Made by a program: the position numbers and the translations under genes
Notes under the pieces: generated by a model
Seen by the model: the letters and a program-made list of their open reading frames with translations, nothing else
Databases searched by the model: none
What the model was told of the DNA's origin: nothing
Shown here: one piece after another, positions 1 through 62,760 of the stretch
How the letters are laid out: each line of letters starts with the position of its first letter
Numbering within the stretch: the first letter of the stretch is position 1
NCBI RefSeq assembly: GCF_036365525.1
Contig: NW_027140453.1
Span: 434,001 to 498,000 of the forward strand
Length of the DNA stretch: 64,000 nucleotides
Direction of reading: 5' to 3'
Source: Heterodontus francisci
Taxonomy: Eukaryota

Positions 1-1200
1 AAACTCTGAACACAGGAAATCTTTCATAGAATCAGAGACTGGTTACAGTACAGAAGGAGTCCATTCCGCCCATCGAGACCATGCCAGCTCTCTGCAAGAT
101 CAACCCAGCTAGTGCAACTCCTCCTATCTCTCATGTCAATTCAATTTGTCGCCATAACCACCTGCAAATTCCTCTGCGCTGTTTCCTTCGCATGCTCTTG
201 TGGAAGGACTTTGTCAGCACAACACAGCAACAGAATCGCATTGCACAGAGAGACACAGAGACAGGAAAGGCACCGTCAGGATGTGTGGTTATCAGAGTGC
301 AGCTGTAAATGTTTCAACATGTTCACGGATGCAGCAAGAAAAAAACAGCCTGTTTTGTGGGTTTAACCGACACACATTTGTATTTTTCCACTCCTAGGCC
401 CGAGGCAAAACAGTAGGTTAAAGGGTAAGGTAACAAAGTGTTATGTTCCTGGGCTAGTAATGTAAAGGCCTGGGCTAATAACCTGGAGATGTGAATTCAA
501 ATCCCAGCATGCTGGATTATTTCAATTCCCTTCATTAGATAAAGCTTGATTGATGAAAAGCTGCTCTCAGTCATGGTGAACATTAACCTACAGTATTGGA
601 CAAAAAACTCATCGTCACTGAGAGAAAGAAACCTGCCATCCTTATCCGCTCTGGCCTAAGAGGTGACTCCAGTCCCACAACAATATGGTTGATTCTTAAA
701 GGGCCCTCTGAATTGGCCGGGCAAGACAGTCGGTCATACAAAAGCTGTGACGGGAACAGACAGCAATGGGGGTGGGCTCATCGCCATCTTCTCAAGGACG
801 GTGAGGTGGTGGGCACTGAATACTGCATAACAGTGCCACAACCACATCCTGTGAATGAAAGCAGATAGAGAGATTGAGAAATATAATAGAATAGAGGCCT
901 CAACACGGGTGTGTGTACACTGCATGGCCTGTCCTCACCCCCAGACACATCATCTGGTCTGTTTCAATCTTTCCCCTCACTGCTCTGTAGCTAACCCCAG
1001 CCTCCTCCATGCAAGCGATACATGCACAGTTACTTGGCTGAGCTCCCATCCAGCATCCCTCATTAACATTCCCCAGTAACCCTCCATCCTAAACTCCCAC
1101 AAAATGCTCATGTGCCTGCTGTGTTATTTCCACCAACTTCACCAATCCCTTTCGACACCCCTAAATGTTGGTGTTGTTCTCCTGCTGAAGATGTTGTTGA
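1..1200 (+). repeat. Segmental direct repeat, copy A (collinear with 61437-62760)
   Basis: 1-545 matches ~61437-61995, 550-750 matches ~62395-62590 and 1047-1160 matches ~62595-62705, including shared unique-looking sequence (e.g. acagagagacacagagacaggaaa...gtcaggatgtg.ggttatcagagtgcagctg). Confidence 0.85.
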
Positions 1201-2085
1201 ATTTGTTGGTGTCTTCTTCCGACTGAAGTTGTTGTTGAACTTCTTGGTGCCTGCTTCTGACTGAAGTTGTTGTTGAATTTGTTGGTGCCTTCTTCTGACT
1301 GAAGTTGTTGTTGAAATTGTTGGTGCTTTCTTCCGACTGAAGTTGTTGTTGGATTTTTGGTGTTTTTCTCTCCTGCTGAAGTTATTGTTGGATTTGTTGG
1401 GTTTTGTTTTACTGCAGCTGAAGTTGTTGTTGTATTTGTTGGTGTTTTTCTCCTGCTGAAGTTATTGTTGAACTTGTTGGTGTTTTTCTACTGCTGAAGT
1501 TGCTGTTGAATTTGTTGGTGCTTATCACCTGCTGACTGAAGTTGTTGTTGTATTTGTTGGTGTTTTTCTCCTGCTGAAGTTATTGTTGAACTTGTTGGTG
1601 TTTTTCTCCTGCTGAAGTTGTTGTTGAATTGTGGGGCTTTTTAACTGTTGCTGAAGTAGTTGTTGTATTCGTTGATTTTTTTTCCTGCTGAAGTTGTTGT
1701 TGAATCTGTTGGAGTTCTTTACTGCCTGCTGACTTTGTTGTTGAACTTTTTGGTGTTTTTCTCCTGCTGAAGTTGTTGTTGTATTCATTGATTTTTTTTT
1801 CCCTGCTGAAGTTGTTGTTGAATTTGTTGGTGTTCTTTAATCCCTGCTGACTTTGTTGTTGAATGTTTTGGTGTTTTTCTCCTGCTGAAGTTGTTGTTGT
1901 ATATGTTGAATTTTTTTTCCGCTAATGTTGTTGAATTTGTGGTGTTTTTCTCCTGCTGAAGTTGTTGTTGTAATCGTTGATTTTTTTTTTCCTGCTGAAG
2001 TTGTTGAATTTGTTGGTGCTTTTCACCTGCTGAAGTTGTTGTTGAATTTGTTGATATTTTTCTTGAATTTGTTGCTGTTTTACTC
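1165..2085. repeat. ~39-bp minisatellite (ctgctgaagttgttgttgaatttgttggtgtttttctc)
   Basis: About 20 or more imperfect tandem units are visible directly; source of the Q/N/T-rich spurious ORFs. Confidence 0.95.
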
Positions 2086-2499
2086 CTGCGATGCAGTGTT
2101 AGAGGGGGCCAATTTGCTACCAATAATATTGTCCTCCTCAGCACAGATGCCACCGGATGTAAGGAACTATGCATAATGATCCAACAACAAAGCATGTGCT
2201 TCGACTACACAGGTCAATGGGATGAACAAATGAGAAACATTTCATTGGCTAGTATTGGGTTTTGTTTTGGTGACATCCTGGGACTGTACAGAGGACAACC
2301 TCTGATGTCCAGAAGGGCAGAACTGCACAGTCAGAGGGGGCAATCCTCAGCAATGATTATCCTCCAACCAAAATTGCTCCGACAATAACCACAGATGATC
2401 TGGACATTATTGCCTGTTTGATGGATCTTGCTTTGTAGAAACTGGCTGCCACTGTTCCTATCTTGCAGCAGTGGCTGCACTTCGAAGAAGTACTAGCAA

Positions 2500-3130
2500 C
2501 GAATATGGGATTAGTAAAGCACTCGGGTTCTTGGGCTTTATAAATGGAGGCATGGAGCACAAGCGCTGGGAAGCTATGATGAACATTTCCAAAGCTCTGG
2601 TTAGGCTGTAACTGGAAGTTTGCGTTCAGTTCTGGTCACCACACTTTAGGAAGGATGTGAGTGTCCATGACAGGGTGCAAAGGAGATTTTACCAGAATGG
2701 TTCCAGGGATGTTACATGGTTATTTTGGAGAATCTGGGGTTGTTTACCTTGGTGCAAAGGCGATTGAGGGGAGATCTGATAGAGGAAACAAGATTGTGAC
2801 AGTGTTAGTTAAGGTAGACAGAGTAAACCTGTTCCCATTAGTGGATGGTGCAAGGACTATTGGTCAAAGATTGATGATTCTGGACAATAGATACTGGGGT
2901 ATTTGAGGAAGAACCTCTATACACAGTGAGTGGTAACAACAGGGAATTCACTGCCTACCATGGTGGTGGAAGTGGAGACAATGAATGATTTCAAAAGGAA
3001 ATTTATTGGACACTTGAAGGAGATAATCTTGCTGGGCCACAGGGATAGAGAGGTAGAATGGGACTGACTGGATTGCATGGACTCGATGGGCAGAATGGCC
3101 TCCTTCTGTACCATACAGGCTGTATGACTT
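2500..3130 (+). mobile_element. CR1-type LINE 3' fragment
   Basis: Degenerate LVRxxLExCVQFWSPHFRKDV / FTRMVPGM motifs and the typical 3' tail (gatgggcagaatggcctccttctgt). Confidence 0.8.
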
Positions 3131-3279: not shown

Positions 3280-3318
3280 TGTTTTTGTCTCACTCTGCCG
3301 CAGGGTTGTATCGCTGTG
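3280..3318 (-). promoter_or_regulatory. 23-RSS of the inverted V
   Basis: Minus strand: CACAGCG (3318-3312), 23-nt spacer, ACAAAAACA (3288-3280). Confidence 0.95.
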
Positions 3319-3938
3319 CCCATACTCGCTGCACAGTAGTAGGTCGCAGTGTCTGTCAGCTGGGGGTCGACCAGCTGCAGGGAGAATCGGTTGCTTGCAG
3401 AGTCGTGTTGCACAGTGAACCGCTTCTCAAAGCCTGGCCCACAGCTGCCGTGCTCATTGCACATCCACTTTACTGCCTTCCCCTCCTGCCTGTACCAGTG
3501 CATGGTGTAGCTGCCCATGCTGGCTCCCTCCAAGCTGCAGCCGAGGGCGAGGGGCTTCCCCGGTCGAATAGAAGCCGCAGCTGGAGTCTGGACCGCAGTG
3601 GGTGCAGACTGAACCCCTGGAACACATTCCATAAAAGAAAGTAATTCAGAATCATGGAAGGAAAATGGTAGCATAAATCATAAAATCTAACAGAATAGAA
3701 AGAGGCCGTTCTGCCCATCGTATCTGCTGTTTGAAAGAGCTATCGAGTTAGTCGCACTTGCCCCTGCTCCTATCCCATTGCCCTCCCAATTTCCCCGCTC
3801 CAAGCACTGATCCAATAGCCATTTGGGAGATTACTATTGAATCTACTTCCTCCTGCTGAAGGGATACCACTTACACCAAATCCAATGTCCAAGCAATAAG
3901 ATGACCAAGATTGAGATGTTTTTAGCTAAGAGTGCCAT
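3319..3938 (-). CDS. Intact antigen-receptor V gene, inverted, TCR Vdelta(TRDV2)-like; leader exon 3938-3875, V exon 3616-3319
   Basis: Leader MALLAKNISILVILLLGHWIW with GTAAGT donor; acceptor ttccag; V exon VQSAPTAVQTP...LGCSLEGASMGSYTMHWYRQ...GPGFEKRF...DTATYYCAAS is open, has both canonical Cys and the Trp, and ends at a 23-RSS. Confidence 0.92.
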
Positions 3939-5723: not shown

Positions 5724-6539
5724 ATGCAGTTAGTCAAACTCTTCCTAATCGTCTGTTCTCTTCTTCCATGTAGGTATTCATTGTTCATAAAGATACCTCT
5801 GCTAAAATACTTGCTGTGTTTTCATTCACTACTAACTTCTATCAAACTAGATTGATAAAACATAATTGCAGTCATTTTCCTGTCATTTCTTAAACTACAT
5901 ACTTTACTTTCACTGTCAATAATATTTACTTAATGAAATTTATGACTGAATAAAAAATACTTATATATTCGTGACGCTACTATACCTATCTTTAACCGAT
6001 AAGTTTGCCCTAATTCTGGGTTAATTTGTCTGTCTCATATCACTTGCTACATTATTTTTCAATCTCTATATCTATCTGTTTATTATCTATATATCTACAA
6101 ATATATCATTTAACGATATATTGTCTGCCTATATAGTTATCTAGTATTATCTACTTATCTATTTGGATAGTTATAGTTGGTTATCATATGTCACAATATG
6201 TTCTAAACTTTTTTAACTATTCTCCTTATTTCTCAAGGCAAAACTCTAGCAGAGGTGATACACCAGTGGCCAACTCTGGTGGTGGTGAAGGGAGGTGAAC
6301 CAGCAGAATTAAACTGTTACCAGAATGACAGTAGTAAGAGCGTTATGCTGTGGTATCGGCAGTTTGCCGGGCAGGGGCTCACCCTAATGGGTCATTCTAT
6401 TAATGGAATCCCAGTCACATACGAAGGAAAATTTGAGGAGGAGGTGAAGATTTTAAGGCCCGAGGAGAGACGATGCAGCCTGAGGGTCCTCAAGGTTAAG
6501 GCTGCGGATGCGGCGGTGTATTACTGTGCAGCCAGTGAG
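5724..6539 (+). CDS. TRBV: TCR beta V gene 1 (leader 5724-5769, V exon 6238-6539)
   Basis: Leader MQLVKLFLIVCSLLP with GTAGGT donor; V exon KTLAEVIHQWP...LNCYQND...WYRQ...DAAVYYCAASE is open. Confidence 0.95.
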
Positions 6540-6578
6540 CACAGCGCTGCAGACTGCCTTAGTGCCAGGACAAAAACC
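6540..6578 (+). promoter_or_regulatory. 23-RSS of TRBV gene 1
   Basis: CACAGCG, 23 nt, ACAAAAACC. Confidence 0.97.
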
Positions 6579-7796: not shown

Positions 7797-7861
<65 letters not shown>

Positions 7862-11954: not shown

Positions 11955-12348
11955 ATGACTGTGTCTCACCTCTGGGTTGTGTTGCTGGTGTTAAGGGGTA
12001 AGGTGGAACTGAACTGGGAGATGACAGTGATCCTCACTGATCCTTGCCCGAATGTCCCCTTTGGGGTTTAACCCCCTCCGAGGTTTATTAACACCGTTTG
12101 GCTGTGTAGATTCTCTCTGCATCGGTTTATATATCACTCGGTCTATCTCTCTCTTTTTCTTCCTATCTTTTTCACACTTTCTCTCTCCCTATCCTCTTTT
12201 TTCTGTCTTTTTCTAGTCTGACTCTCCTTTTGTCCGTTTCTCATTCTCCCTGTCCCTGTCTGCTTTCCTCTCTCTCTCTCTTTCTCTCACTCTTTCCCTT
12301 TCTTTGTTCTATGGATTACCCTTGGTTTTACCTTTAACTTTCTGTCAT

Positions 12349-12387
<39 letters not shown>

Positions 12388-12859
12388 GCATGTCTCATTT
12401 TCTCTCACTCACTCTTTCTCCCTCTCTATTTTTCTGTCTTTATAACACGGAGCTCTCTCTCTCTCTGTTTCTCTCTCACACACACTCCCACCTCTCCATT
12501 CATTTACCCCTTCATGGTGCATCATTCTTAACACCTCTCTGCTCACTTTGTGTTTTACAGATGTTGGAGCCGTGCTGATCCAACAGATTCCCCCTTCTAT
12601 ATCCCATTCCCCGGGATCTCCAGTCAGCATCGAGTGCATTTGCACTGAAGCAGCAGCTGACTCGTATTTCCACTGGTACCGATGGCACCCTGACAGTGAG
12701 CCTCAGGACCTTTTCTATTCTAACTACATCGACATGGTCACCCCCTCCGGTGAGGTGGACGGTTTCACCGCCAGGAGACCTGACAGCACTCACTTTTACC
12801 TGGAGTCCTCCGGCCTGTGGGAGAATCACTCAGCCGTGTATTACTGTGCCTGGAGTTTA
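11955..12859 (+). CDS. TRBV: TCR beta V gene 2, TRBV30-like (leader 11955-11997, V exon 12561-12859)
   Basis: Leader MTVSHLWVVLLVLR with GTAAGG donor; exon DVGAVLIQQIP...GSPVSIEC...WYRW...LFYS...ARRPDSTHFYLESS...YYCAWS. Confidence 0.95.
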
Positions 12860-12898
12860 CACAGTGACTCAGAGAAATACAGCAGTTCAACAAAAAAC
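12860..12898 (+). promoter_or_regulatory. 23-RSS of TRBV gene 2
   Basis: CACAGTG, 23 nt, ACAAAAAAC. Confidence 0.95.
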
Positions 12899-13685: not shown

Positions 13686-14418
13686 ATGCCTTTCAGTTTC
13701 ATCCTCTTTGCTATTTCCCTTCTGGCGCTGAGTAGGTTAACACTCTGTCCCAATCACTCTTCTACATTTGATAATAGAAAGGGATGATTAATGATCTCAA
13801 TATAACTGAGCAGCGATTACTTGTTAAATCAGTAATCGATTATTTCATATCAGACAGTGAACTCATTCATCTGTCCCCCAGTTCGGGAAGACAAGTGCTA
13901 TTAATATGATGTTAACTCTTTAATGTTTGCACCCACTTGCAAGCTTGTGGATTCCACAATTCTATTTTACAGTTGTAAAGATCCAGATGCTTGCAGGAAA
14001 TTAGGACACAGACCGAATTTCCGTCGTTAATTCGGTGCAACACCGACGTCCATCGTCGCAATTGTAACTCCATCGATACCAGTTCATTCACTCTAATTTC
14101 TCTTTCTAGGTGTTTGCCGGGGTGATGTGATACATCAATGGCATCAGTCACTGGCTGTTAAACAACCAGGACCCGTGGAAATGAACTGTCTGCAGGAAGG
14201 AGCAGTTCGCAACAACATGTACTGGTATCGTCAGTCCCCCGGCAGAGGATTCCTGTTAATCGGGTTTACATTAGCAGCAGGTGAACCTCAATATGAAGAT
14301 GGATTTAAGAGCGGATTTGCAATCACGAGGACTCTGGAAAATAAGAAATCCACTCTGACGATCGAGAGTGTGAACGCCACGGACGAGGCGGTGTATTTCT
14401 GTGCAGCTGGTGATGGGA
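13686..14418 (+). CDS. TRBV: TCR beta V gene 3 (leader 13686-13731, V exon 14110-14418)
   Basis: Leader MPFSFILFAISLLAL with GTAGGT donor; exon VCRGDVIHQW...MNCLQEG...MYWYRQSPG...DEAVYFCAAGDG. Confidence 0.95.
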
Positions 14419-14457
14419 CACAGCGGTTCAGAGTCATTGGCTGCCTTGACAAAAACC
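14419..14457 (+). promoter_or_regulatory. 23-RSS of TRBV gene 3
   Basis: CACAGCG, 23 nt, ACAAAAACC. Confidence 0.97.
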
Positions 14458-16819: not shown

Positions 16820-17481
16820 ATGCTGTGTACTGTTTACCTCCATCTACTGTTCCTGCTGCTCCCAGGTTACTGCTCCTACTTGGAGGGAAATTCAGGCCCC
16901 AGTTAATCAGCTTTGAGACACAATTCCTGTTGATATCGAAGGGCTCCAATCAGTTAGAGATTTACTGGTTTGGTTTTATTGTTGAGGACAAGTGTCGTTA
17001 TTTAGCGCTGCTGCAGTTGTGCCCAGCGATTCTGGGAATCAGCATATGACCCCTGTGCTGGGGCGTCAGCGGGCTGATCGACTGCAGTGTGCATCGTGAG
17101 TTTTACCATTAAATCTCTCTCTCTCTCCTCATTGTGTCTGTTCTCTTTGACCCGATCTGTTTCTCATGTTCCTGCACAGCCCGGTCCAGGAGCGCTCTCG
17201 TTACCCAGTGGGGGAACCGGCTGACGGTCGCAGAGGGGAAAACGGTGGAAATGCACTGTTTCCAGAATGACACCGACGACAGTTACATGTACTGGTATCG
17301 CCAGCAGAGCGGAGCAGGGTTACAGCTCATAGTGACCTCGCTTGGCACCTCTGATCCCAGGCCTGAAGAAGGTTTCAAGGAGAGATTTAAAGTCACCAGA
17401 CCCGATCTTAAAACCTGCAGCCTGAAAATACTGAGGGTGGATCAGACTGACAGGGCGGTGTATTACTGTGCTGCTAGTGAT
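16820..17481 (+). CDS. TRBV: TCR beta V gene 4 (leader 16820-16865, V exon 17180-17481)
   Basis: Leader MLCTVYLHLLFLLLP with a weak GTTACT donor; exon RSRSALVTQWG...MHCFQND...MYWYRQQSG...DRAVYYCAASD. Confidence 0.92.
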
Positions 17482-17520
17482 CACAGTGATTCAAACAGGA
17501 GCAGGGCTGCGTCAAAAACA
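17482..17520 (+). promoter_or_regulatory. 23-RSS of TRBV gene 4
   Basis: CACAGTG, 23 nt, TCAAAAACA. Confidence 0.92.
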
Positions 17521-26752: not shown

Positions 26753-26754
26753 AT

Positions 26755-42178: not shown

Positions 42179-42228
42179 TTCTGGCTCTCAATATTACTTT
42201 GGAAGCGGTACCAAGTTAGTTGTGACAG
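42179..42228 (+). CDS. TRBJ: TRBJ segment SGSQYYFGSGTKLVVT
   Basis: GGTTTTGTT-12-CACTGTG; GTGAGT donor. Confidence 0.95.
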
Positions 42229-42542: not shown

Positions 42543-42595
42543 TTCTGGAAGCTACGAGTATTTCTTTGGCGACGGGACTAAACTGACTGTGTTGG
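42543..42595 (+). CDS. TRBJ: TRBJ segment SGSYEYFFGDGTKLTVL
   Basis: AGTTTAGTA-12-CACTGTG; GTGAGT donor. Confidence 0.94.
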
Positions 42596-43651
42596 GTGAG
42601 TTGGACGTTCTTTGAAAAAAAATGATTGTAGCTCACGCTGTTTCTGAGTTTCAGTTTGCAACTGAAATGTTGCATTGACAAATAACTCAAAAATTTCAGG
42701 CAGCATTTCCAATGTGCATAAAAGCCAGAATACATGGAAAATACTAAGATGCACAGGGAAAGACATTTTTTTAATTCGTTCGTGGCATCTGGTCCAGAAT
42801 TTATTGCCCATCTCTGATTGTCTTCTGAGTGGTCTGCTAGCTCATTTTTTTTCATCAGATGTGGGCGTCGCTGGCAAGGCCAAGATTTGTTGCCCATCCC
42901 TAATTGCCCTTGGACTGGGTGGTTTGCTATTTCAGAAGGCAGTTGCGAGTCAACTGAAGTCTGAAGTCACTTAAATGACAACAGACGGGGTTTTCTGACA
43001 ATTGACGATAGTTTCATGCAGTTAAACCAGACTTTCATTTATCAGTTGAAGTTAAATTCCTCTGGCTACCCTCGGGATTTTAACCAGAATATTACTAGCA
43101 CAGTAACATTATCACTTTGCAACCATCGCCCCTGCACTCAATGGGGTGTAGGTTTTTCCGCAGTCCTGTCAGGAAGGGAGTTGCAGATTTGTTAACCGTT
43201 TTCTCAGAGGGCAGATTATTTGTTTCCAAAAAATGCTGTCATAATTCTTCCCCCAGAATGAGTGAAATAAAACATCATAATTACATTTAATTATATAGAA
43301 TTTACAGTGTGTAAGCAAGCCAGTGGTGAAACTGCACACGAGCCTCCTCTCACCCTTACTTCATCTAATCTTCTATTCCTTTCTCTCCCATGTCTTTTTC
43401 CAATTTACTCCTTGAAAGCATCTCCAAAATCCATCTCAACCCATTCCTTGTGGTAGTGCATTCCACATTATTACCAAAATCTGAGTAACGAACTTCCCTT
43501 TCTATTCCTCACAATGAATTTCTAATTAACATTATAATGCCCTTGACATAAAGAGTCAAATCTCCAGTGCATTCTGTGTGAGGTTTTGCATCAGTGCACC
43601 AGCTTCATTGCTCTTCGACCTGTAGTTATACTATTGTCATGTAACATTGTG

Positions 43652-43704
43652 TACAGGAAATACTCTGTATTACTTCGGTGACGGGACAAAATTGATTGTT
43701 TTAG
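43652..43704 (+). CDS. TRBJ: TRBJ segment TGNTLYYFGDGTKLIVL
   Basis: AGTTATACT-12-CATTGTG; GTGAGC donor. Confidence 0.92.
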
Positions 43705-44204
43705 GTGAGCACAGAACTGAAGCTTTTGTTGTTTTCGTTAATGAGGATCCTTGAGATTCTCAGACGAAATTAGATGCTCTAAAATACATCATGTTCTCGG
43801 TCACAGAATCACCTCGCCGATTTATATTGGCAGCTGGACCTGCAATATCTTGGTTTAAATATCTTTCACATTTGTTTTCAACTCAACCCAAGGCCTCCCT
43901 GTCCCTGTAATGTCCTCCGGCCCCTACAAACCTCCCTATCCCTGTAACCGCCTCCAGCCTCTATAACTCTCCTTATCCCTGTAACATCCTCCAATCCAGA
44001 CAAATCTCGCTGTCTCTGCAACCTCCACCAGGCCCTATAACTTACCTTTTGTTCTCCTGTGCAATATCTAGGGTGCATTGCCGCTGTCTTTACATCACAC
44101 ATTAATAGTATGTAAATCTACAAATTGAATACATCATTTTGAAGACGTTGCATTTTAGCATTTCTAACTAGATGGGAGTTTTAACACTGACAGGCATCAC
44201 TGTG

Positions 44205-44257
44205 CTCAAATAACTACGATTATACTTTTGGCGATGGGACCAAGTTAGTAGTTTTCG
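44205..44257 (+). CDS. TRBJ: TRBJ segment SNNYDYTFGDGTKLVVF
   Basis: AGTTTTAAC-12-CACTGTG; GTAGGT donor. Confidence 0.94.
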
Positions 44258-44926
44258 GTAGGTGAACGGTTACACCATTGTATTCATTTTACAGTTTAAT
44301 TGCTATTATGTTGCCTCCAATGGGGAGTGGAGAGGGTTTAGTTAATGATTTGACCCAATCTCCAGCCTGCCTTTAAAAGAGATTAATTTGCTTCTCTTTT
44401 AGAGTAACACTATTGTTAAATTGTTCCATTCACTATCCACTGGGATAGTCAAACTTGATAAAGCCATTTGTTGGTCTATTGTTATATTCTGTGATTGCCC
44501 ACAACTCTCCATTATTCTAGTTATCAATGGGAATATCAAGAATCTCATTGTAGCTTTTTATGTGAAACTAAAGCCGTACTGGGATGTCTAACATCAGATA
44601 TTTTGATGGAAAACCCTCTGATTTCACCTCTCGCAGAGGAATCCGTAGTAAAAGTACATGATAATAATTGATTGTAAAAGATCTCTGGAACTCCCTCTTC
44701 AACAAAAAGCTGTGAATCCTGGAGGGCGATTAGACCTGACAAAATTGAGATGGAAATAACTTTGTTTGGGGAGGTTATCGAGGGATATCGAGATCAGAAT
44801 GGTAAATGAAGTGAGGTACAGATCAGCCTTTGAATAGAGGAGCAGGATAGAGGGGCTGAATGGCCGCCTCCTGGTGCAATAGGTTGTCTGGAGGTAATAG
44901 TTTTGTAATGGGAGTGTAACACTGTG

Positions 44927-44982
44927 TTATGGAAAGACCGAACCATTATATTTTGGCCAAGGGACCAAGCTCACAGTTTTGG
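44927..44982 (+). CDS. TRBJ: TRBJ segment YGKTEPLYFGQGTKLTVL
   Basis: AGTTTTGTA-12-CACTGTG; GTATGT donor. Confidence 0.94.
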
Positions 44983-45017
44983 GTATGTAAATGTTAAAGG
45001 CTTTGTTTGTCTAACTA

Positions 45018-45540
45018 GTCCTTGAAGCGGCCAACACTCCCAGCTGATACACACTACTGAGTCAGCGGCGCTTGAGATGGCTTGGCCATGTGAGCCGCAT
45101 GGAAGATGGCAGGATCCCCAAAGACACATTGTACAGCGAGTTCGCCACTGGTATCAGACCCACAGGCCGTCCATGTCTCCGCTATAAAGACGTCTGCAAA
45201 CGCGACATGAAATCGTGTGACATTGATCACAAGTCGTGGGAGTCAGTTGCCAGCGTTCGCCAGAGCTGGCGGGCAGCCATAAAGACAGGGCTAAATTGTG
45301 GCGAGTCGAAGAGACTTAGTAGTTGGCAGGAAAAAAGACAGAGGCGCAAGGGGAGAGCCAACTGTGCAACAGCCCCGACAAACAAATTTCTCTGCAGCAC
45401 CTGTGGAAGAGCCTGTCACTCCAGAATTGGCTTTTATAGCCACTCCAGGCGCTGCTTCACAAACCACTGACCACCTCCAGGCGCGTATCCATTGTCTCTC
45501 GAGATAAGTAGGCCCAAAAGAAAGAAAAGAAAGAAGAAGG
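45018..45540 (+). mobile_element. RTE-clade LINE 3' end (5'-truncated, young-looking)
   Basis: Uninterrupted RLRWLGHVSRMEDGRIPKDTLY...GRPCLRYKD...CSTCGRACHSRIGFYSHSRRC (C-terminal zinc finger) and a purine-rich tail. Confidence 0.88.
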
Positions 45541-46139
45541 GATAGTCTATCATCATATTCTGTAGTTTCCCATTACTGTCCAGTTTTCGAATTATCAACC
45601 AGCACATCGACAAACTTATTATCCTTTCAAAAATATAGAAAATGCTGTGTGACATTAAACCGACAGAGAAGTGCATTGGGTTGTCTAACGTAGAATGTTA
45701 TGGTGGAAATGCCTTCTTGTGATTGGCTGAATTGTTTTGGAATTGGGAGACATTCCTCAGGCTCTTTTCTCAGGAGGGTTATTGGGTGGAGTAGAATCCA
45801 GGATAGACATGGCTGGAAAGACATGACCCTAATACTTTTGTCAATCCATACTTTATGGGCTTGCAGCCAAAATTAAGTCAACAATTCTGAGCTGTTGCCG
45901 CATAAAATTGTTAACCTCACACTAATTAATAAAAATGACCTCTTCGATTTTGTTTTAGAAGATTGTGCTTTGCCTTCATCCGTATAAAATTCAATCCCAT
46001 TCTTAAACAGAGTTTGTTCAGCTTGTTATGATTAACGTCCTGAAGCAGTGATCTTCTGGAATGAATGCTCACTGTTGATAATGGGACAGACTTCTAAAAA
46101 AAACAGTTGATGGAAATAATTAGACAAATATGCATGTTG

Positions 46140-46680
46140 GACACAAGAATACCACTCGGCCCATCTTACTAGAGTCGGCTGTTGGAAAAAGCTCTCCAAT
46201 TCGCCCAACTCACCCCTTTTCTTTCTATACAGCCCTGCAATTTTCGCCTTTTTGAACTATGCTCCAATTCTTTTTTGAAGTTCAATATGCAATCAGTATC
46301 TATCACATTTTCAGGTAATGCATTCCATATCATAACAAGTCGTTGTGTAAAGAAATGGCCCCTCAATAAACATCTGGATCTTTTGCCAATTGCCTTAAAT
46401 CTATGTTCTCTGGTTGTGAAATCTCCGGCCAGTGGAATCAGTCTCCCCCTACTGACTCTAACAAAGCCCTTCGTGGCTTTGAAAGCAACTATTAAATCTC
46501 TCCTCACCTTCTCTGGGAGAACAATCCCACCTTCTCCAGTCTGTCCACATAACTGAGTCCCTCATTTCTAGGACCATTCCAGTAAATCTCTCTCTGCACG
46601 CTCTCCAAGACCTTGACATCCTTCCAAAAGTGTGGTGCCCTGAATTGGGCACGAGACTCCAGCTCAGGCCTAACTGAGGG
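46140..46680 (-). mobile_element. CR1-type LINE 3' fragment
   Basis: RRDLIVAFK...FFTQRLVMIWNALP motif. Confidence 0.82.
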
Positions 46681-46715
46681 CCCTGGTAGTTTTACAACTG
46701 GCCTGTGACATTGTG

Positions 46716-46764
46716 TTCAGCTGGGACCTCGATCTCTTACTTTGGCTCTGGGATTACGTTCTAG
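46716..46764 (+). pseudogene. TRBJ: TRBJ pseudogene SAGTSISYFGSGITF*
   Basis: Good RSS (AGTTTTACA-12-CATTGTG), but a deletion after FGSG gives a frameshift and stop. Confidence 0.85.
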
Positions 46765-47324
46765 GTAGGTAAACAAGAATAGATCTCAATATTCAAATTT
46801 AATTCGCTCTAAGTGTTCATTCATTGCTTCGTAATTCTGCCAAAACTCACAAACCTGGCCACATACTGGAAAACTTGAGTAAATTTGAATCCCAAGATGC
46901 ACAATTTTGCAAAGACAACGTTACCAGACTTCTCTGTGTCTACCCTCCGGAACCCCCCCCCCACCTTTTCATAATCTTAGACGCCTCTTTCAGGTCACCT
47001 CTAAGCCTTCTCTTATCTATCATAAAGGCTATTCAGTCTTTCCTGATAGGTAAATATGTATGAAGACGAGAACTGTGCACAGTGATCCAAGTGTGGTCTA
47101 ACCGAGGGATATGGAGACCAGAACTGTGCACAGAGCTCCAAGAACGTCTAATCAAATTTTACCATAATTTCTCTGTTTTCAAATGGAATGGTGGAGAAAA
47201 GGTCAGAAAAATCTATACATTGCAATTGGTTGAATGATAATTGTTCCAAGGTGTCAGCGCATTCGATGAAGTATCATGTAATCATTGGTACCCAGCAGTT
47301 TTAATACTGCTTTGTAACACTGTG

Positions 47325-47380
47325 TTCTGGAAACAGCACACCTCTCCGCTTTGGCGATGGGACAAGATTAACAGTTCTGG
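47325..47380 (+). CDS. TRBJ: TRBJ segment SGNSTPLRFGDGTRLTVL
   Basis: AGTTTTAAT-12-CACTGTG; GTATGT donor. Confidence 0.94.
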
Positions 47381-48017
47381 GTATGTAAAACCGAGCGATT
47401 TGTCCCCCCAGTGTTCAATGTAAAAGCATTAAGCTTCACCAATGTAAAAGCAGAGAGGCAAGGCTCAACTAGTAGTGATTATTTTAAAAGCTGAACTCAG
47501 GAAGGGCCACTGTCGAGTTTATAACAGATGCAAACCCGAGTCAACGATTTTGAACAGGACTCCAATCAAACACAAGAAGCCACAAAGGACCATTCATCCC
47601 TTGAGCCTCTTACACCATTCACTTAAATCATGGCTGAGTTTTATCTTAGCTCCAGCTACCGTTTTTGGTCCCATAACCTTTAACACACTGACCCAACAAA
47701 AATGATTGAATGTAATAAACAAAGACTAGATCTAGTCAAGATTGTAGAAGATTAGATACTAAATGGCAAACTCACCTAGTCTTCCTTCAAGAAAATAACT
47801 AAATTGAGTGCATAAGGAATTGACTTACATTTATGCTGAAACACTATTTCAAATCAGAATTCAAAGTGAGAGATACGTGGCAATGTCCAAACAGTTTAAC
47901 AATTTCACTACTTGCTTTCTTGGCATACTAAATAAATATAGGGAACAAGCTACTGCATTGGCAGTCTACGGGAACTGTTAGGCAATCCTAGTTTTCTGAT
48001 AGGAATGTAGCATTGTG

Positions 48018-48069
48018 GATGTAACTACTAACTTTCATTTTGGCCCCGGTTCCAAATTAACAGTGTTGG
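48018..48069 (+). CDS. TRBJ: TRBJ segment DVTTNFHFGPGSKLTVL
   Basis: AGTTTTCTG-12-CATTGTG; GTAAGT donor. Confidence 0.93.
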
Positions 48070-49086
48070 GTAAGTTTTAAAAAATGTAACGTTTTGAGTG
48101 CGTCAATTAAGTTAGTTGTATATTTACCCATGGCATTGCACTCCAGTACATAACTGCACAGTGCTGTATGTCTGACCCTGCTACCCAGATTTCCCTCGTT
48201 GCCCCACTTATTACCAAATTATCGTAATAATTATTATATTTATTTCGCAATATTTCAGCAAGATGTATTCTGAAAACAAGTAGGATAAAGCAGAGAAGAT
48301 TAAGTGGTGGTGGGAGGATTGATACCAGGGAGAAAGGATTTCAGCTTTGTAGAGAGACTGGAAAAGCTGAATATTGTTCTCCTTGGAGCAGAGAAGGTTA
48401 AAGAAGATTTGCCAGTGTGGTACCAGGGATGAATGACTTCAATTGTGTGGAGATACTGGAGAAACTGGGGTTGTTCTCCTTAGAGAAGAGAAGGTTAAGG
48501 TGAGAATTAATATCATATTCAAAATGTCCAAAATCATATGGTTTGTAATAGAGTAAATAAGAATAACTCATTTCTGCTGGGAGAAGAGTCGGTAAGCAAA
48601 GAGAACAGATTTGTGATTGGCAAAAGAAACAAAGAGGGAGATGAGTATTTGCTTTTACACAGCCAATTGTTGTGATGTGGAATGCACTGCCTGAAAATAG
48701 CTCAAACAATGCATTTGATGCATACTTGAAGGCTAACAAATGTAGGGTTATGGTGAAGCAGCAAGAAGCTCTGGGTGTTCGCAGAAGATTGAGCAACCTG
48801 AAGGCTTAATTCTAATTGGTATCCCCTGATGCAGTGCGACATAGTACTTGTCTGCATCTTTAATATTGACTAATATCCAATAATAACAGCAAACAAAGCA
48901 CAGGGCTTCCTTTGCAGGGGATTAGCTAGCATTCCAAAGCACAGAAGTTACATGAAACTTATATAGAACTTTGGTTAGATTGTTGCAATTTCAATGAATT
49001 TCGATGTAAAATCCCCAGCACCAACTCCATCCATCTGGAGGGGAGAGACACTCTTGTTAGTTTTAGTGTAGGGTTGCAGCATGGTG

Positions 49087-49137
49087 CTTCAGGATATGAA
49101 CAGTATTCTGGAGGGGGCACGAAGCTAAGCGTTTCGG
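49087..49137 (+). CDS. TRBJ: TRBJ open reading frame with non-canonical SGGG (SGYEQYSGGGTKLSVS)
   Basis: AGTTTTAGT-12-CATGGTG; GTGAGT donor; Phe of FGXG replaced by Ser. Confidence 0.8.
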
Positions 49138-50077
49138 GTGAGTAGCTGACAGTACAAGAGGTCTCAGTTAATGATGGATGGACAGAAGTCTGCTGTTGTT
49201 CTACGGATGCAGTTCTCTAATTGTGGGGAGGGATTTTAGCAGATGAACACGAGGATTCATTTCACGTGTAGGGGACATTTACGCGGGATTCGTGCATTGT
49301 TCTGTCAGTGAGGCGGTGGCTCCTTATTTCTGTAACTTCCTCTGGACCTAAAAGAAACCCTGATGATTTCTCTGTGCTCCTCCAATTCTGGCCTTTGTGC
49401 ATCCTGCCCTCCCTCGAACCCACCATTGGCGGCTGTGCCTTCAGCTGCCTGAGCCCTAAACCCTGGAATTCCCTCCTTATACACCTCTGCTTCTCTCCCT
49501 CTCTCCTTCTTTGAGATGTATCTTAGAACCTACTTCTTTGACAGGTCACCTGTCCCTAATATCTACTTCGATAACTCGGTATCAAGTTGCTGTCTGAGTT
49601 GCTCTGATGGTGTGATTTTTCACTGCATCAACGGTGCTAGTTAAATGCAATTTTTTTGTTGTTATTAATCACCAGGTAGGCCTCGCCTGGAGTATTGTGA
49701 CCAATTCGTGGCGAACACACTTTAGGAAGGATGTCAAGGCCATAGAGAGGGTGCAGAAGATGTTTACTAGAATGGTACCAGACATGGGGAGGTTTCACTT
49801 GTGTTTAGAAATGGGAGAAGCTGGGATTGTTCTCCTTGGAGCAGAGAAGGCGAAGGGGAGATCAGTGTTGTTTTATTAAACTTATTCTTAAAATAAAGAC
49901 ACATTCGCAAGTAACCAGGAAAAGCAGACAAAATATAAAGGGAAAATTAATTGAAGACAAACAACAGCGTGGTGAATCCCGGAGGGAGGAAGTCCCAATA
50001 AAAGTACAATTGTTAAGACCAAAATTAAACTTGTGTTCAGCCCCTTTGGAAACAGGTAGATTTTGGACAGCAACGTG

Positions 50078-52488: not shown

Positions 52489-55400
52489 GCGAAAACGATA
52501 CGATTAGGCCTGCCAAAGTTACTGTCTTTGAGCCCTCTCCCGAAGAGATTAGAGAAAAGAAAAAAGCCACTGTGGTCTGCCTCATAAGCGACTTCTACCC
52601 CGACAACATCAAGATCCACTGGCTTGTCGATGGCAAGGAGAAAGACGCCAATGACACGAACATTCATACTGATCTCAATGCCATCCTATCAAAAGAAAAT
52701 ACATCTTACAGCATCAGCAGCCGGCTGAGATTCGACGCCCTAGATTGGGCTCGGTCCAAGAACGTTGAGTGCAGAGTAGATCTCTACACTAACGAATCAG
52801 TGCCTGCAACAAGCAGTTCAACATTAGCTGTCAAAGCAGGTAGGCACACTAGTGAGACCAATACCATTTTATTTCAGCTTCAAAGAAATCAGAAAGTTGC
52901 ATTTATATAGCACCTGTGCTCTTATGAAAGTACGAATAAGCAAGTAGATGTATCAGTAAGTCAATAAATAAATAAATAATTCATGAAATAGAACAATATT
53001 GTAGTGTAAAGGGGAAGATATGGTTAAACACTCGATTAAAATGACTCTCAATATATTAGACTACAGTGCGGGACTCAATTGTGATAATCTACATTTACAC
53101 AGTGATTTCATAAAATATTCTGATGCTGAATGTTTATTGATTTCTCTTTCTTTTCCCAGAAATGTGCGGTATAAGTAAAGGTGAATATCTATCTGCTTCT
53201 ATCTGTATCTGGTCTCCACACTTTGTAAAGGAGGTGAGGGTCCTTGAGAGGGTGCAGAGGAGATTTACCACAATGGTTCCAGAGATGAGGAATTTTAGCT
53301 ACAAAGTTACATTGGAGAACCTGGGTTGTTCTCCTTGGAGAAAAGGAGATTGAGGGGCTATTTGACAGAGTTGTACAAGATTATGACAGTTTTACAATAG
53401 GTAGACAAAGAAAAGTTGTCCCCATGAGTTGCTGGCATAAGGACTGGGGGGGGGGGGGAGGTCACAGTTTTCAGGCTTTGGGCAAAAGATGCACTGGGGG
53501 GGGATGTGAGGCAGAAGTGTTTTATGCAGCGAGTGGTAATGACCTGGAAGTCACTGTCTACGAGGGTGGTGGAAATGGAGATAATGAATGATTTCATAAG
53601 GAAACTGGACGGACTGTTGAGGGTAATTAACTTGCAGGGCAATGGAGATGGAAGGGGAGAGCTGGACTGATTGGATTGCTCTGTAGAGATCCTGCATGGA
53701 CTCGATGGGCCGAATGACCTCTTTCTGTGCTGTAATGACTCCATGACTCAAAAAATATTCACCAATAATTCTGGAATTATTACTGTGTCAGACATTTCAT
53801 GTATATACTCATTTCAACATTTCCAAGCTGTAGTTTTACAGTTATACATACTATCATGCACAACGTGTTTATGAGAAAACTCCTCTGGGAGGGAAAGGCC
53901 GTTGGAATTTCGAGACCAGCCTAGTCGAATGATATAACCTCACGGTCCTCTTGGGTTCACGACCTCAGGGAAATATGTTGCCCTGTGATGAGGGAGAGGG
54001 GACGCCTGGGGATGGGAGGGGAGGGAGCTGTGTACACCTGTCTTAAAACTTACAATTCCTTGGGAGTTGATAGTGTGAATCTGGCGTGGAGATAAGAGGG
54101 ACAGTTCCACTTCTCAGAGGTTAAATTAGTTTAACACATCATCTCAAAGAAGGTTCCTCCAAAGTTGCAGTGCAGCACACACGCTGTCTACTGGCACTGG
54201 GAGAGTCAGTCTGGATTATGGGGTTCATGTCTTTGGACTGGGGCATGAACCCACAATCGTACGACTCAGACAGGAGAGCGTTACCCACTCAGCTGGAGCT
54301 GATACATACGTGAGCCATAGCTGACACAGAAGTTACAGCGGCCCCAATTCAGATCGGCCATATTGCTGAACTCCATTTGTAGTTAGGAATACCCCAGGGC
54401 TCCTTGCGTCAAAGGGAGATCAGTTCTGCTTTCGCAGCTCGACCCTTACATTGGGCTCCTTTACTGACACACATTACATTTTCACGCAGTAGCATTTCTT
54501 GCCTTGTGAGAACAGAGATTGCATCATTTTCTGTTACATTTATTTTACAGAGGCGAAAATCCAAAGCATGGCAACAGCAAAACTGACATACCTGATCCTC
54601 ATCTGCAAAAGCATCTTTTATACAATTTTCATCTCAACAATTGCTTGGAAAACTAAGGTAAGATTAAACTTACTGAAGTTCTTAACATAGGTATTGTCAT
54701 GGTGAAACTGGGTAAAGAAGTTTCTCCTGAATTCCAGACTGAAATTACGAGTGACTATCCGATATTCACGAGCCCTAGTTTTGCATTCCTATTGCACGCA
54801 GATGGAATACACCAATTCACTTTCCATTCATTCCTGCGCCCACAACACTAACCAACCAATTTAATCCAGTTGAACACAATTGTCAATGTTCTGGAATTTC
54901 CCTTGGAAAATAATTGAACTTATTGTGATTTTACAAGACTTTATATGCAAGCTTAGGAATGCATGAGCAGGAAAGAGCATGTGCATGGTTCGTCTCGATT
55001 ATTCATGCACATGATGATCTGGTCAGGACAGTGATGTCGAGTCATTGGAGAGGGTGAAGGGGCGATTTACTTGAACGGTATCAGGGTTGAGGGACCTCAG
55101 TGATGTGAGGAGAATACGGAAGTTGGGATTGTTCTCCTTGGATCAGGGAAGGTTAAGGAGAGATTTAATAGAGGTGTGCACAATGATGAATGGTTTGGAT
55201 AGGACAACGAATGGGGTAACAGCTTCAAAGAGGCAGCAGGATTGCCCAACCAAGGACACAGCTGTAAGGTGATTAGCCAAGGGAGCAGAGGGGCAGGTGA
55301 GAAATATATTTTGAGCCAGCGAGTTGTTGTGGTTGAGAATGCACTGGCTGAAAGGGCGGTGGAAGCTGATTTAGTAGCAACTTTCAAGAGGGAATTGGAT

Positions 55401-55630
55401 GAATACTTGTTTGAGGGGGTGGAGGTAGTGGGGGAGGGAATAGTCTCAGGGCTATAGGGGAAAGAACTGTGAAATGGGACTAATTGGACAGCTCTTTCAA
55501 AATGCCAGTATAGGCACGCGGGACGAATGGCCTCCTTCTGTTCTGTATCAGTCCATAATTCCATGACGATAATAACTCCCTCTTTTTTTTTATCATATAC
55601 CAGACGTCTTACAGCAAAAGGTTTGACTGA
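52489..55630 (+). CDS. TRBC: TCR beta constant gene, 4 exons: 52489-52839 (Ig C1), 53160-53180 (connecting peptide EMCGISK), 54551-54657 (TM), 55604-55630 (cytoplasmic TSYSKRFD*)
   Basis: VTVFEPSPEEI..KKKATVVCLISDFYPD..W..DG...YSISSRLR...W...VECRV matches the Cbeta pattern; interchain Cys in exon 2; TM TYLILICKSIFY with the conserved Lys; all splice sites GT-AG with consistent phases. Confidence 0.96.
53205..53750 (+). mobile_element. CR1-type LINE 3' fragment in C intron 2
   Basis: WSPHFVKEVRVLERVQRRFTTMVPEM motif and tail. Confidence 0.82.
55030..55565 (+). mobile_element. CR1-type LINE 3' fragment in C intron 3
   Basis: KLGLFSLDQGRLRRDLIEV motif and tail. Confidence 0.8.
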
Positions 55631-60077: not shown

Positions 60078-60967
60078 AATAGATAGATAGATGGATAGAT
60101 AGACAAGGATTGACTGAAAGGTAGAAAGGGATTGATAGATAGATATAAATATAGAAAGCTATTGATAGATATAAAGAGAGTTGTATGGAGACATCAATTG
60201 ATAAAGTGGTAGATAGATAGATACTAATAGAGAGATAGAGAGTTGGATAGAATGATCGATCTCTAGAGACATATATAGGCGTATCATATCAGATCATATA
60301 GACATATAAGAGATATGTATGGATAGAGAGATCAATAGATAGAGGCATCAATAGATAGAGAGGGAGATACAGGGAGAGAGATGGAGATGAAGAGATAGAT
60401 GGATATAAAGAAATAGATGGATAGGGAGAACAATAGCTAGACAGAGTGATGGGTATATAGTTAGTTAAATAAAGTTATCAACAAATAGATAGATGAACTG
60501 TTGGAATAAATGGATGGGGAGATAGTTGGATATAAAGAAAGGAATTGATGGATGGAGAGAGCAATAGGTAGAGAAATAGATAGACAGATTGATAGAGAGA
60601 TAGACAGATAGATCGATAGAGCGATGGCTCAGCAGATAGATAAATAAATAGATAGAGAGTGTGAAAGAAATGAATTGGGAGTTCTATAGATGTCATTGAG
60701 AAAGAGATGGACGGAGGGAACAACAGATAGATTTGTAGATAAATATTGATGGATAGAGATTCTATATAGAGAGTGAAATCGGTCGACAGACAGATAATTA
60801 GNNNNNNNNNNNNNNNNNNNNNNNNNNNNNNNNNNNNNNNNNNNNNNNNNNNNNNNNNNNNNNNNNNNNNNNNNNNNNNNNNNNNNNNNNNNNNNNNNNN
60901 NNNNNNNNNNNNNNNNNNNNNNNNNNNNNNNNNNNNNNNNNNNNNNNNNNNNNNNNNNNNNNNNNNN
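60078..60967. repeat. GATA/GA-rich degenerate microsatellite ending in an N gap (60802-60967)
   Basis: Directly visible. Confidence 0.9.
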
Positions 60968-61436
60968 AATGAACAGAGGTGTAATGAAAAACAATACCGT
61001 GATGTGGGGGTAAATGCTACTCTGGCACATGCATTTATAGTTTAACTGCTTGTCTTAAAGATAAAGTGTTGTTCTTCCAAAGGAATCACTACCACACCGT
61101 TCGTGCAAAATTGTATTGACCTTACAAACACTAATCTGCACACAGGAAACAGATTCCCCCGCCCTTTTGTGTGAAGAAATGCTTCCTGACATCACTCCTG
61201 AACAGCCTGGCTCGATGTTTGGGTTTAGACCACCTTGTTCTGCCCCCGTGCCCCGCCCCCAACAAGAGAAAGCAGTTTATCTCTATCTAGCCTATCAACA
61301 CATTCAATCATTTTAAACACCTCAGTCAGATCACCGTTTAATCTTCTATACCTGAGGGAATAAAGAGTCAGCAATGTAAACATGTTGGGTGTTGCATTTC
61401 CTTCACACTTGATTGACTGATCAAATATATTTTCAG

Positions 61437-62760
61437 ATTCTCCGACTACAGGGAATCTATCAAAGAATCAGAGATGGGTTACAGTACAGAAGGAGGCCAT
61501 TTGACCCATCGAGTCAATTCCAGCTCTCTGCAAGATCAACCCAGCTAGTGCAACTCCTCCTATCTCCCCTGTTAATTCAATTCGTCGCCCTAACTACCTG
61601 CAAATTCCACTGTACTGCTTTCTTTCCATGTGTTTTTGTGGAAAGACTTTGTCAGAACAACACAGCAGCAGAATCGAATTATACAGAGAGACACAGAGAC
61701 AGGAAACACGCAGTCAGGATGTGCGGTTATCAGAGTGCAGCTGCAAACGTTTAAACAGCTTAAGAAAGAAAAACAGGCTGGTGTGTGGATTTAACAGTGA
61801 GTGAATCACACGTAGAAACACGCCCACATTTGCATTTTCCACTCCTAGGGCTGAGGCTCAAAAGAAGGTTCAAGTGTAAGGTAGCAAAGTGTTACGTTAC
61901 TGGGCTAGTAATCTAAAGGCCTGGGCTAATAACTTGGTGACGTGAATTCGAATCCCAGCAAGGTGGATAATGTAAGTTCACTTAGTTAGATAAACATTCA
62001 CTCCCTCCACCACCGACACACAGTGGCAGCAGTGTGTACCATCTACAAGATGCACTGTAGCAATGCACAAAGACTCCTCAGACAGCACCTTCCAAACTCG
62101 CGACCTCTACCAACTAGAATGACAAGGGCAGCAGATGCATCGGAACACCACCACCTGCAAGCTCCCCTCCAAGTCACACACCATCCTGACTTGGAACTAT
62201 ATCGCCGTTCCTTCACTGTCGCAGGGTCAAAATCCTGGAACTCCCTTCCTAACAGCACTGTGGATGTAACTACCCCACGTGGACTGCAGTGGTTCAAGAA
62301 GGCAGCTCACCACCACCTTCTCAAGGGCAATTAGAGATGGGCAATAAATGCTTGCCTGGCCAGCGACGCCCACATCCTATGAACGAACTTAAAAAATGAT
62401 AAAAAGCTGGTCTCAGTCATAGTCAGCATAAAACTACTGGATTTCCTGAAAAACCCATCTCTCACTGAGAGAAGGAAATCTGTCATCTTTAACCGGCCTG
62501 GCCTAAAAGGTGACTCCATTCCTGCAACAATGTGGCTGACTCTGAAATGACTGGGCAAGCCAGTTGGTCATACAAAAAGCTGTGCTGGGCACCCACCCAG
62601 CATCCCTTATTAACACTCCCTATTAACCCTCCATCCTAAACTCCTGCAAAATGCTGATGTGCCCGCCGTGTTATTTCCTCCCATCCTCAGGAGCCCCTTT
62701 CGACTCTGTTCCTGCTGTGTGTTTCTCATGTTGTTTTCAGCTCAGTATCTGTTTTGTATT
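61437..62760 (+). repeat. Segmental direct repeat, copy B (with an extra LINE piece at ~61996-62390)
   Basis: Collinear with 1-1200. Confidence 0.85.

What the first reader, a model, noticed from the sequence alone, without database searches (positions are those of the whole stretch)
1..62760. The whole V-D-J-C cassette is bracketed by a ~61.4 kb-spaced direct repeat: possible multicluster TCR beta
Seen: 1-1200 is collinear with 61437-62760, which lies ~6 kb 3' of Cbeta. Between the copies are only 4-5 V genes of very different families, 2 D, ~26 J and one C. Inference: the window start is the 3' flank of another Cbeta, so TRB is arranged as tandem V-D-J-C miniloci (like the shark Ig cluster organisation) rather than a single translocon. 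The inverted V would then occupy the 3'-of-C inverted position held by TRBV30 in mammals.
Basis: partly seen in the sequence, partly recalled or inferred. Interest (0 to 1): 0.85.

Follow-up and report, generated by a model that had tools for sequence, protein, structure and literature searches.

The report
Old duplicated flank around shark TCR-beta cassette
A complete horn-shark T-cell-receptor beta gene cassette is flanked by two old, about 80% identical copies of a 0.9-kb non-coding segment, which hints at repeated cassettes but does not prove them.

Summary
The repeat is real. Window 1-1187 matches 61436-62733 in three collinear blocks, about 900 bp at 75-83% identity (K2P 0.20). Copy B carries a later 400-bp SINE-like insertion and copy A has 280 extra bases. 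It is too diverged to be an assembly artefact. It is probably not a chance pair of transposon insertions, because the match runs unbroken through two unrelated repeat fragments and sequence unique in the window. So A and B are probably paralogous segments, as old as the internal D-J and V-flank duplications.

Between them lies one intact Heterodontus francisci TRB cassette: an inverted atypical V, four forward V of different families, D1 with about 9-10 J, D2 with about 16-18 J, and one four-exon Cbeta. B lies 5.8 kb 3' of Cbeta. Both copies hold the window's only ETS/RUNX/GATA/E-box cluster, so B is a candidate E-beta-like element.

I could not test whether another Cbeta lies upstream.

Separate evidence supports several cassettes. 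Two NCBI Cbeta models on other scaffolds differ from this C, and their flanking pseudo-exons are roughly 3-6% diverged. Tandem 61-kb units remain unproven (about 0.4). Other first-reader notes of this scan describe similar TRB cassettes on other pieces of this genome.

The parts
1..1187 (+). Copy A of the bracketing segment. Homologous blocks are 1-543, 551-757 and 1037-1187; 758-1036 is A-only. It is a mosaic: a LINE 3'-tail-like piece at about 23-141, unique DNA at 141-434, a SINE-like element from about 434 to 865, then unique DNA.
61436..62733 (+). Copy B. Homologous blocks are 61436-61994, 62397-62592 and 62584-62733. It is interrupted by a younger SINE-like insertion at 61995-62396.
261..305 (+). 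Motif cluster in A: ETS core, ETS/RUNX (GGATGTGTGGTT), a GATA site overlapping the RUNX site, and E-box CAGCTG.
61699..61743 (+). The homologous motif cluster in B (candidate E-beta-like core). Its last 37 bp differ from A at one base.
3280..3938 (-). Inverted, intact, atypical V. Leader 3938-3875, V exon 3616-3319, 23-RSS 3318-3280.
5724..6578 (+). V1. Leader 5724-5769, V exon 6238-6539, 23-RSS 6540-6578.
11955..12898 (+). V2 (ends in CAWS). Leader 11955-11997, V exon 12561-12859, 23-RSS 12860-12898.
13686..14457 (+). V3. Leader 13686-13731, V exon 14110-14418, 23-RSS 14419-14457.
17180..17520 (+). V4. V exon 17180-17481 plus 23-RSS. It is 93% identical to the V of the 1994 horn-shark cDNA P0003.
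27228..27307 (+). D1 with 12-RSS and 23-RSS. Coding part 27256-27268 (GGGACAGCAGGGA).
27750..34936 (+). J1 cluster, about 9-10 J.
36555..36635 (+). D2 with both RSS. Coding part 36583-36596 (GGGACAGGGGGGGA).
37075..49144 (+). J2 cluster, about 16 J. Weaker J-like hits lie at 50068-50133 and 52340-52393; the latter has no splice donor.
52489..55630 (+). Cbeta. Exon 1 52489-52839, exon 2 53160-53180, exon 3 (transmembrane) 54551-54657, exon 4 55604-55630.

Best explanation
The window holds one complete, apparently functional TRB cassette of the horn shark. The two bracketing copies are paralogues of one ancestral intergenic segment of about 0.9 kb. They were duplicated in the same old wave (K2P about 0.2) that duplicated the D-J cluster and the V2/V3 upstream flanks. 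Afterwards each copy was interrupted independently by SINE-like insertions. That much is shown. Inferred: the segment carries a T-cell-type enhancer core (ETS/RUNX/GATA/E-box). Copy B, 5.8 kb 3' of Cbeta, would then be this cassette's E-beta-like element. Copy A, followed after 2.1 kb by an inverted V, would be the same 'enhancer plus inverted V' end-module of a preceding, old and diverged TRB unit. On this reading horn-shark TRB is a series of small translocons rather than a single locus, and the inverted V joins to a D by inversion through its 23-RSS.
For: The repeat is real, collinear and far beyond chance. The match runs without a break through a LINE-tail piece that has at least 11 copies in the window, then about 290 bp found nowhere else in the window, then a SINE-like element with partial copies at 57.1, 35.5 and 24.0 kb, then more unique DNA. 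This is a shared mosaic, which independent insertions would not produce. Its K2P of 0.20 equals that of the D-J duplication (0.15-0.33) and the V-flank duplication (0.22). The only two places in 64 kb where a RUNX site has GATA, E-box and ETS motifs all within 45 bp are the homologous points of A and B; shuffled sequence gives 0.17 per window. The mammalian TRB enhancer lies downstream of Cbeta2 and depends on composite RUNX-ETS sites (PMC7696796). In mammals a single inverted V follows the last D-J-C cluster (PMC10464911). The inverted V has a 67% identical orthologue in Scyliorhinus torazame, scyTo_0012004. It sits on a contig of the same length as that species' Cbeta, scyTo_0012006, and two locus tags away. 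Multi-copy cassettes: P0001 and P0002 lie on contigs of 1.57 and 1.99 Mb. Both differ from this window's C at one residue in exon 1, and from each other at one residue in the transmembrane exon. Their non-C exons match window 29.0-34.5 kb and 4.7-5.8 kb with 8-13% amino-acid differences.
Against: Nothing upstream of base 1 or beyond 64000 could be read. The 1.27 kb right of B has no similarity to 1188-5000 and contains no V or C on either strand. At 20% divergence A is not the flank of a recent copy of this cassette. The motif set was chosen after I had seen the sequence, and ETS-RUNX composites alone are not enriched (3 observed, 2.3 expected). That the window and P0001/P0002 come from one assembly is assumed. 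The catshark gene order and orientation are unknown.
Confidence: 0.4

Rival explanations
1. A and B are paralogues from an old local duplication, but A simply lies inside or at the edge of this cassette's own V region. More V genes, not a Cbeta, lie upstream, and the inverted V is an ordinary member of the array that happens to be flipped. The repeat would then say nothing about the organisation of the locus.
For: The locus has other old local duplications of the same age: D-J, the V2/V3 flanks, and 9904-10277 against 10974-11334. The match stops at 1187/62733 and the flanks differ. First-reader notes, which I did not check, describe long forward V arrays on other pieces and 0.88-1.0 Mb further along this piece. 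One note calls an equivalent 1.4-kb copy 'V-array intergenic DNA'.
Against: It does not explain why the only T-cell-type motif cluster in the window lies in this segment. It also does not explain why the catshark orthologue of the inverted V is annotated next to Cbeta.
Confidence: 0.35
2. A and B are two independent insertions of one composite mobile element of about 1 kb, dispersed genome-wide and direct by chance.
For: Parts of the segment belong to dispersed families: the LINE-tail piece has at least 11 copies and the 434-731 piece at least 5. The window holds about 30 LINE 3' fragments. The identity is in the range seen among repeat copies here.
Against: The LINE-tail piece is on the opposite strand to the SINE-like element. 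About 290 bp and 150 bp of the shared sequence occur nowhere else in the window. Both copies end at the same point on the right, and the similarity extends about 20 bp beyond the start of the LINE-tail family.
Confidence: 0.15
3. The repeat is an assembly artefact or haplotig: one region assembled twice.
For: Two gaps lie between C and B, and TRB is spread over several scaffolds.
Against: The copies differ at 17.6% of sites and by separate insertions of 400 and 280 bp. Haplotypes or assembly duplicates would be nearly identical.
Confidence: 0.02

Closest known systems
Mammalian-type TRB translocon (V array, D-J-C clusters, E-beta, inverted TRBV30)
   Same: Forward V genes with 23-RSS, D segments with 12/23-RSS, a J cluster and a four-exon C. 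A candidate enhancer-type motif cluster lies a few kb 3' of C. One inverted V sits next to a copy of that module.
   Different: The two D-J clusters share a single C, instead of each having its own D-J-C. No inverted V is seen within 8.4 kb 3' of C. The inverted V sits at the 5' edge of the window and is not Vbeta-like: its best solved-structure matches are antibody VH domains, and its nearest Atlas clusters are Valpha and Vgamma.
Duplicated V-D-J-C TRB loci of pike and salmonids, and the TRB duplication of squamates (PMC10464911, PMC11754216)
   Same: More than one complete V-D-J-C unit per genome, each a small translocon.
   Different: In pike and salmonids the units are head-to-head, in inverted orientation. 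Here the repeat is direct, the relative position of the units is unknown, and no whole-genome duplication is involved.
Shark immunoglobulin cluster (minilocus) organisation
   Same: Many self-contained rearranging units per genome would be the shared principle.
   Different: Ig clusters are 10-20 kb with typically one V, two D and one J (PMC1845163). This unit is at least 55 kb with 5 V, 2 D and about 26 J.

Membership tests
Cluster (minilocus) organisation, shark-Ig type | Several complete V-(D)-J-C units in one genome | tested here: inconclusive
   There are three distinct Cbeta sequences: the window's, P0001 and P0002, the last two on contigs of 1.57 and 1.99 Mb. Cassette flanks are about 3-6% diverged. 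That all three come from one assembly is assumed, and highly diverged haplotypes are not excluded.
Cluster (minilocus) organisation, shark-Ig type | Each unit is compact, with one or very few V, D and J | tested here: not met
   The unit has 5 V, 2 D and 26-28 J spread over at least 55 kb.
Cluster (minilocus) organisation, shark-Ig type | Units adjacent on one chromosome; rearrangement confined to a unit | not testable with these tools
Mammal-type TRB 3' end (C, E-beta, inverted V) | An enhancer a few kb 3' of the last C with RUNX-ETS composite sites | tested here: inconclusive
   The ETS/RUNX/GATA/E-box cluster at 61699-61743 lies 6.1 kb after the stop codon and is conserved in copy A. It is the only such cluster in the window; 0.17 are expected. 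The motifs were chosen post hoc and there are no functional data.
Mammal-type TRB 3' end (C, E-beta, inverted V) | A single inverted V beyond the enhancer | tested here: inconclusive
   There is none in 55.7-64.0 kb, and the window ends 1.27 kb after B. An inverted V lies 2.1 kb after copy A.
Interspersed repeat (single transposable element) | The similarity ends at the element's termini; the element is one unit on one strand | tested here: not met
   The match crosses a minus-oriented LINE tail, unique DNA and a plus-oriented SINE-like element, and extends past the start of the LINE-tail family.
Interspersed repeat (single transposable element) | Many copies genome-wide | not testable with these tools
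Within the window the full unit has only two copies.

The most novel reading that the evidence does not exclude
Horn-shark TRB is built from repeated small translocons. Each would have a handful of V from different families, two D-J clusters sharing one C, an E-beta-like 3' element and an atypical, VH/Valpha-delta-like inverted V conserved since the split from catsharks. That organisation would be intermediate between the shark Ig cluster and the tetrapod translocon.
Probability: 0.3. Interest if true: 0.75.

Novelty: new variant of a known kind. Interest (0 to 1): 0.5.

Why it matters
Cartilaginous-fish Ig genes are the textbook case of cluster organisation, whereas, to my knowledge, their TCR genes are generally assumed to be translocons. 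I found no paper in the searchable library that describes the genomic layout of a shark TRB locus. Several self-contained TRB cassettes would bear on how allelic and cassette exclusion of the beta chain works at the base of jawed vertebrates. A candidate E-beta 3' of C in a shark would also make the age of the 'C, enhancer, inverted V' module testable.

Tried and rejected
Steps that failed or gave nothing:
After that I sent those letters to no database, paper or findings search and masked them in my scripts. (tandem-repeat finder) did read the whole window by reference.
- The search of earlier findings by sequence returned nothing, which is uninformative.
- A search with Cbeta exon 1 alone found no further horn-shark C models.

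Negative results:
- Rfam and ARAGORN found no tRNA or other RNA family in A or B. My recollection that the 434-865 element has a tRNA-derived head is therefore untested.
- No C-like or V-like exon lies on either strand in 55.7-64.0 kb or 1-3000. The inverted beta-like minilocus noted on other pieces is therefore not within 8.4 kb of this C.
- There is no CTCF-like consensus in A or B.

Not available or rejected:
- Rast and Litman 1994 (PMC44789) is not held.
- The assembly-artefact reading was rejected on divergence.
Full report
What the window is. Translating the C exon and searching it gave 98-99% identity to Heterodontus francisci TCR-beta proteins, including the 1994 cDNA 'T-cell receptor homolog'. 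The window carries:
- an inverted V (leader 3938-3875, V exon 3616-3319, 23-RSS 3318-3280);
- four forward V, each with a leader candidate, conserved Cys/Trp/Cys and a 23-RSS (V exons 6238-6539, 12561-12859, 14110-14418, 17180-17481);
- D1 (27256-27268) and D2 (36583-36596), each with a 12-RSS on the 5' side and a 23-RSS on the 3' side;
- 21 J with a canonical FGxG motif and 26-28 J-like hits by a profile, about 9-10 after D1 and 16-18 after D2;
- one Cbeta of four exons (52489-52839, 53160-53180, 54551-54657, 55604-55630).

The five V share only 27-42% amino-acid identity.

The repeat. Self-comparison shows 4-543 = 61440-61994 (79.5%), 551-757 = 62397-62592 (75%) and 1037-1187 = 62584-62733 (78-83%), all direct and collinear. 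The similarity runs on to base 1 (16 of 22 bases), so copy A is truncated by the window edge. Copy B contains an extra 61995-62396, a SINE-like element ending in poly-A and 80% identical to 7080-7456. Copy A contains an extra 758-1036, part of which (776-859) resembles the tail of that same family. Over 954 ungapped sites p = 0.176 and K2P = 0.20. The match ends at 1187/62733. In A a 38/118-bp minisatellite follows (1166-2063). The 1.27 kb after B has no counterpart in 1188-5000.

Artefact, transposon or paralogue?
- Seventeen per cent substitutions plus separate insertions of 400 and 280 bp rule out an assembly duplicate or haplotig.
- The segment is built partly of dispersed repeats. Bases 23-141 are the 3'-tail piece of a LINE family that has at least 11 tail copies and about 30 ORF-bearing fragments in the window. 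Bases 434-731 have partial copies at 57179-56897 (inverted), about 35.5 kb and about 24.0 kb.
- However, the A/B similarity passes without a break from about 20 bp before the LINE tail, through it, through about 290 bp that occur nowhere else in the window, through the SINE-like element on the opposite strand, and into further unique DNA. Two unrelated repeat fragments and unique spacers in the same order and orientation are what a duplication of an already mosaic stretch leaves. Independent insertions would not leave this pattern.
- I therefore read A and B as paralogous segments (about 0.8) and keep a composite mobile element as a minor rival (about 0.15).
- I could not measure genome-wide copy number.

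Age. The K2P of A/B (0.20) falls within the values for the internal duplication of the D-J region (26.2-35.7 kb against 35.8-43.2 kb; six blocks at 0.15-0.33). It also matches the duplicated upstream flanks of V2 and V3 (0.22). The bracketing copies belong to the same old period of local duplication.

A possible function.
- Within the unique part, A 261-305 and B 61699-61743 carry an ETS core, a GGATGTG(T/C)GGTT ETS/RUNX arrangement, a GATA site overlapping the RUNX site, and a CAGCTG E-box.
- The last 37 bp of this cluster differ at one base between A and B.
- Scanning the whole window for a RUNX site with GATA, E-box and ETS motifs within 45 bp finds exactly these two homologous places. First-order shuffles give 0.17 per window.
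- The mammalian TRB enhancer lies downstream of Cbeta2 and depends on composite RUNX-ETS sites (PMC7696796). The motif cluster in B lies 6.1 kb after the Cbeta stop codon.
- I chose the motif set after reading the sequence. ETS-RUNX pairs alone are not enriched (3 observed against 2.3 expected). This is a hypothesis (about 0.3), not a finding.
- A second island, a 47-bp perfect run at A 84-130, is longer than expected at 79.5% identity (P about 0.003). I have no explanation for it.

Is there another Cbeta upstream? This cannot be seen.

In favour:
- A is followed after 2.1 kb by an inverted V with its RSS facing A. This is the order 'enhancer, inverted V' that ends mammalian TRB loci (PMC10464911).
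- The inverted V has a 67% identical orthologue in Scyliorhinus torazame that keeps its odd W-x-C-N-E-H-G-S-C pair. That gene, scyTo_0012004, lies on a contig of the same length (215,987) as that species' Cbeta, scyTo_0012006, and two locus tags away.

Against:
- No V or C exon lies in 55.7-64.0 kb on either strand, and the flanks right of A and B are unrelated.
- With 20% divergence, A cannot be the flank of a recent copy of this cassette.
- The inverted V is not a typical Vbeta. Its best solved-structure matches are antibody VH domains, and its nearest Atlas clusters are Valpha and Vgamma.

Independent evidence for several cassettes.
- Two NCBI gene models from horn shark, P0001 (contig 1,569,485) and P0002 (contig 1,986,717), encode Cbeta with CLVSDF where the window has CLISDF. 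They differ from each other in the transmembrane exon (FYTIF against FYAIF).
- Their upstream 'exons' are pieces of non-coding cassette DNA. P0001 matches window 29.0-34.5 kb, including two J identical in protein. P0002 matches 4.7-5.8 kb, including the V1 leader. Amino-acid differences are 14 of 173 for P0001 and 20 of 156 for P0002, which I estimate as about 3-6% at the DNA level.
- That is well above what I would expect between ordinary alleles. Three different C sequences also cannot all be alleles of one locus in one animal, if, as I assume, the window and the models come from one assembly.
- The 1994 cDNA P0003 uses a V that is 93% identical to V4 and a J that matches neither J copy of the window exactly. 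This again points to paralogues.
- Unchecked first-reader notes of this scan describe the same V-D1-J(9)-D2-J(18)-C layout on another piece. They also describe inverted V or inverted beta-like miniloci 3' of Cbeta on other pieces, and V arrays 0.88 and 1.0 Mb further along this piece. I used these as leads only.
- The multi-copy nature of the cassette is likely (about 0.75). Its tandem arrangement is untested.

Comparison with known systems. The unit is a small translocon, not a shark-Ig-type cluster. It resembles the duplicated V-D-J-C loci of pike and salmonids (PMC10464911) and the squamate TRB duplication (PMC11754216). Unlike the pike and salmonid loci, the copies here are direct rather than head-to-head. 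Unlike mammals, two D-J clusters share one C. In eight full-text searches I found no description of a shark TRB locus layout; the 1994 horn-shark paper is not held.

The N runs were left as they are. The linkage of C to B rests on scaffolding across two gaps whose continuity I could not test.

Noticed in passing
window 3280-3938 (-): The inverted V is not Vbeta-like. Its best solved-structure matches are antibody VH and nanobody domains (about 70 bits for a single domain), and its nearest Atlas clusters are TCR Valpha and Vgamma. It has a 67% identical orthologue in Scyliorhinus torazame that keeps the unusual Cys pair (WxCNEHGSC) and is annotated two genes from Cbeta. This looks like a conserved atypical V in shark TRB loci.
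   Followed up: partly
window 26222-35687 vs 35793-43237: The D-J region is tandemly duplicated without a C in between: D1 with about 9-10 J, then D2 with about 16-18 J, then a single Cbeta. The six blocks have K2P 0.15-0.33. The D1 and D2 coding parts differ (GGGACAGCAGGGA against GGGACAGGGGGGGA).
   Followed up: partly
window 52340-52393: A J-like element (YSGVGTKLTAL, with the FGxG motif broken) lies about 100 nt 5' of C exon 1. It has no splice donor and lies in one open frame with C exon 1 (ORF 52134-52910). A first-reader note describes the same feature on another piece of this genome.
   Followed up: no
window 84-130 and 61518-61564: A 47-bp stretch is perfectly identical between copies A and B, inside the LINE-tail piece. 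It is longer than expected at 79.5% identity (P about 0.003). The cause is unknown; constraint or a conversion tract are possibilities.
   Followed up: partly
window 1166-2063, 24714-25329, 26753-27112: Three minisatellites: 38/118-bp units with 23 copies, 33-bp units with 19 copies, and 44-bp units with 8 copies. The last abuts gap 26559-26752, and its D2-side paralogue at 36270-36412 has only 3 units.
   Followed up: no
window 5724-5769 and protein P0002: The NCBI model P0002 joins upstream junk ORFs and the V1-type leader exon directly to Cbeta exon 1, skipping the V exon. It is a mis-built gene model, but it is useful as a sample of a paralogous cassette.
   Followed up: partly
window 5226-5298 (+): ARAGORN reports a tRNA-like structure with an undetermined anticodon. 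It is probably the head of a repeat element.
   Followed up: no
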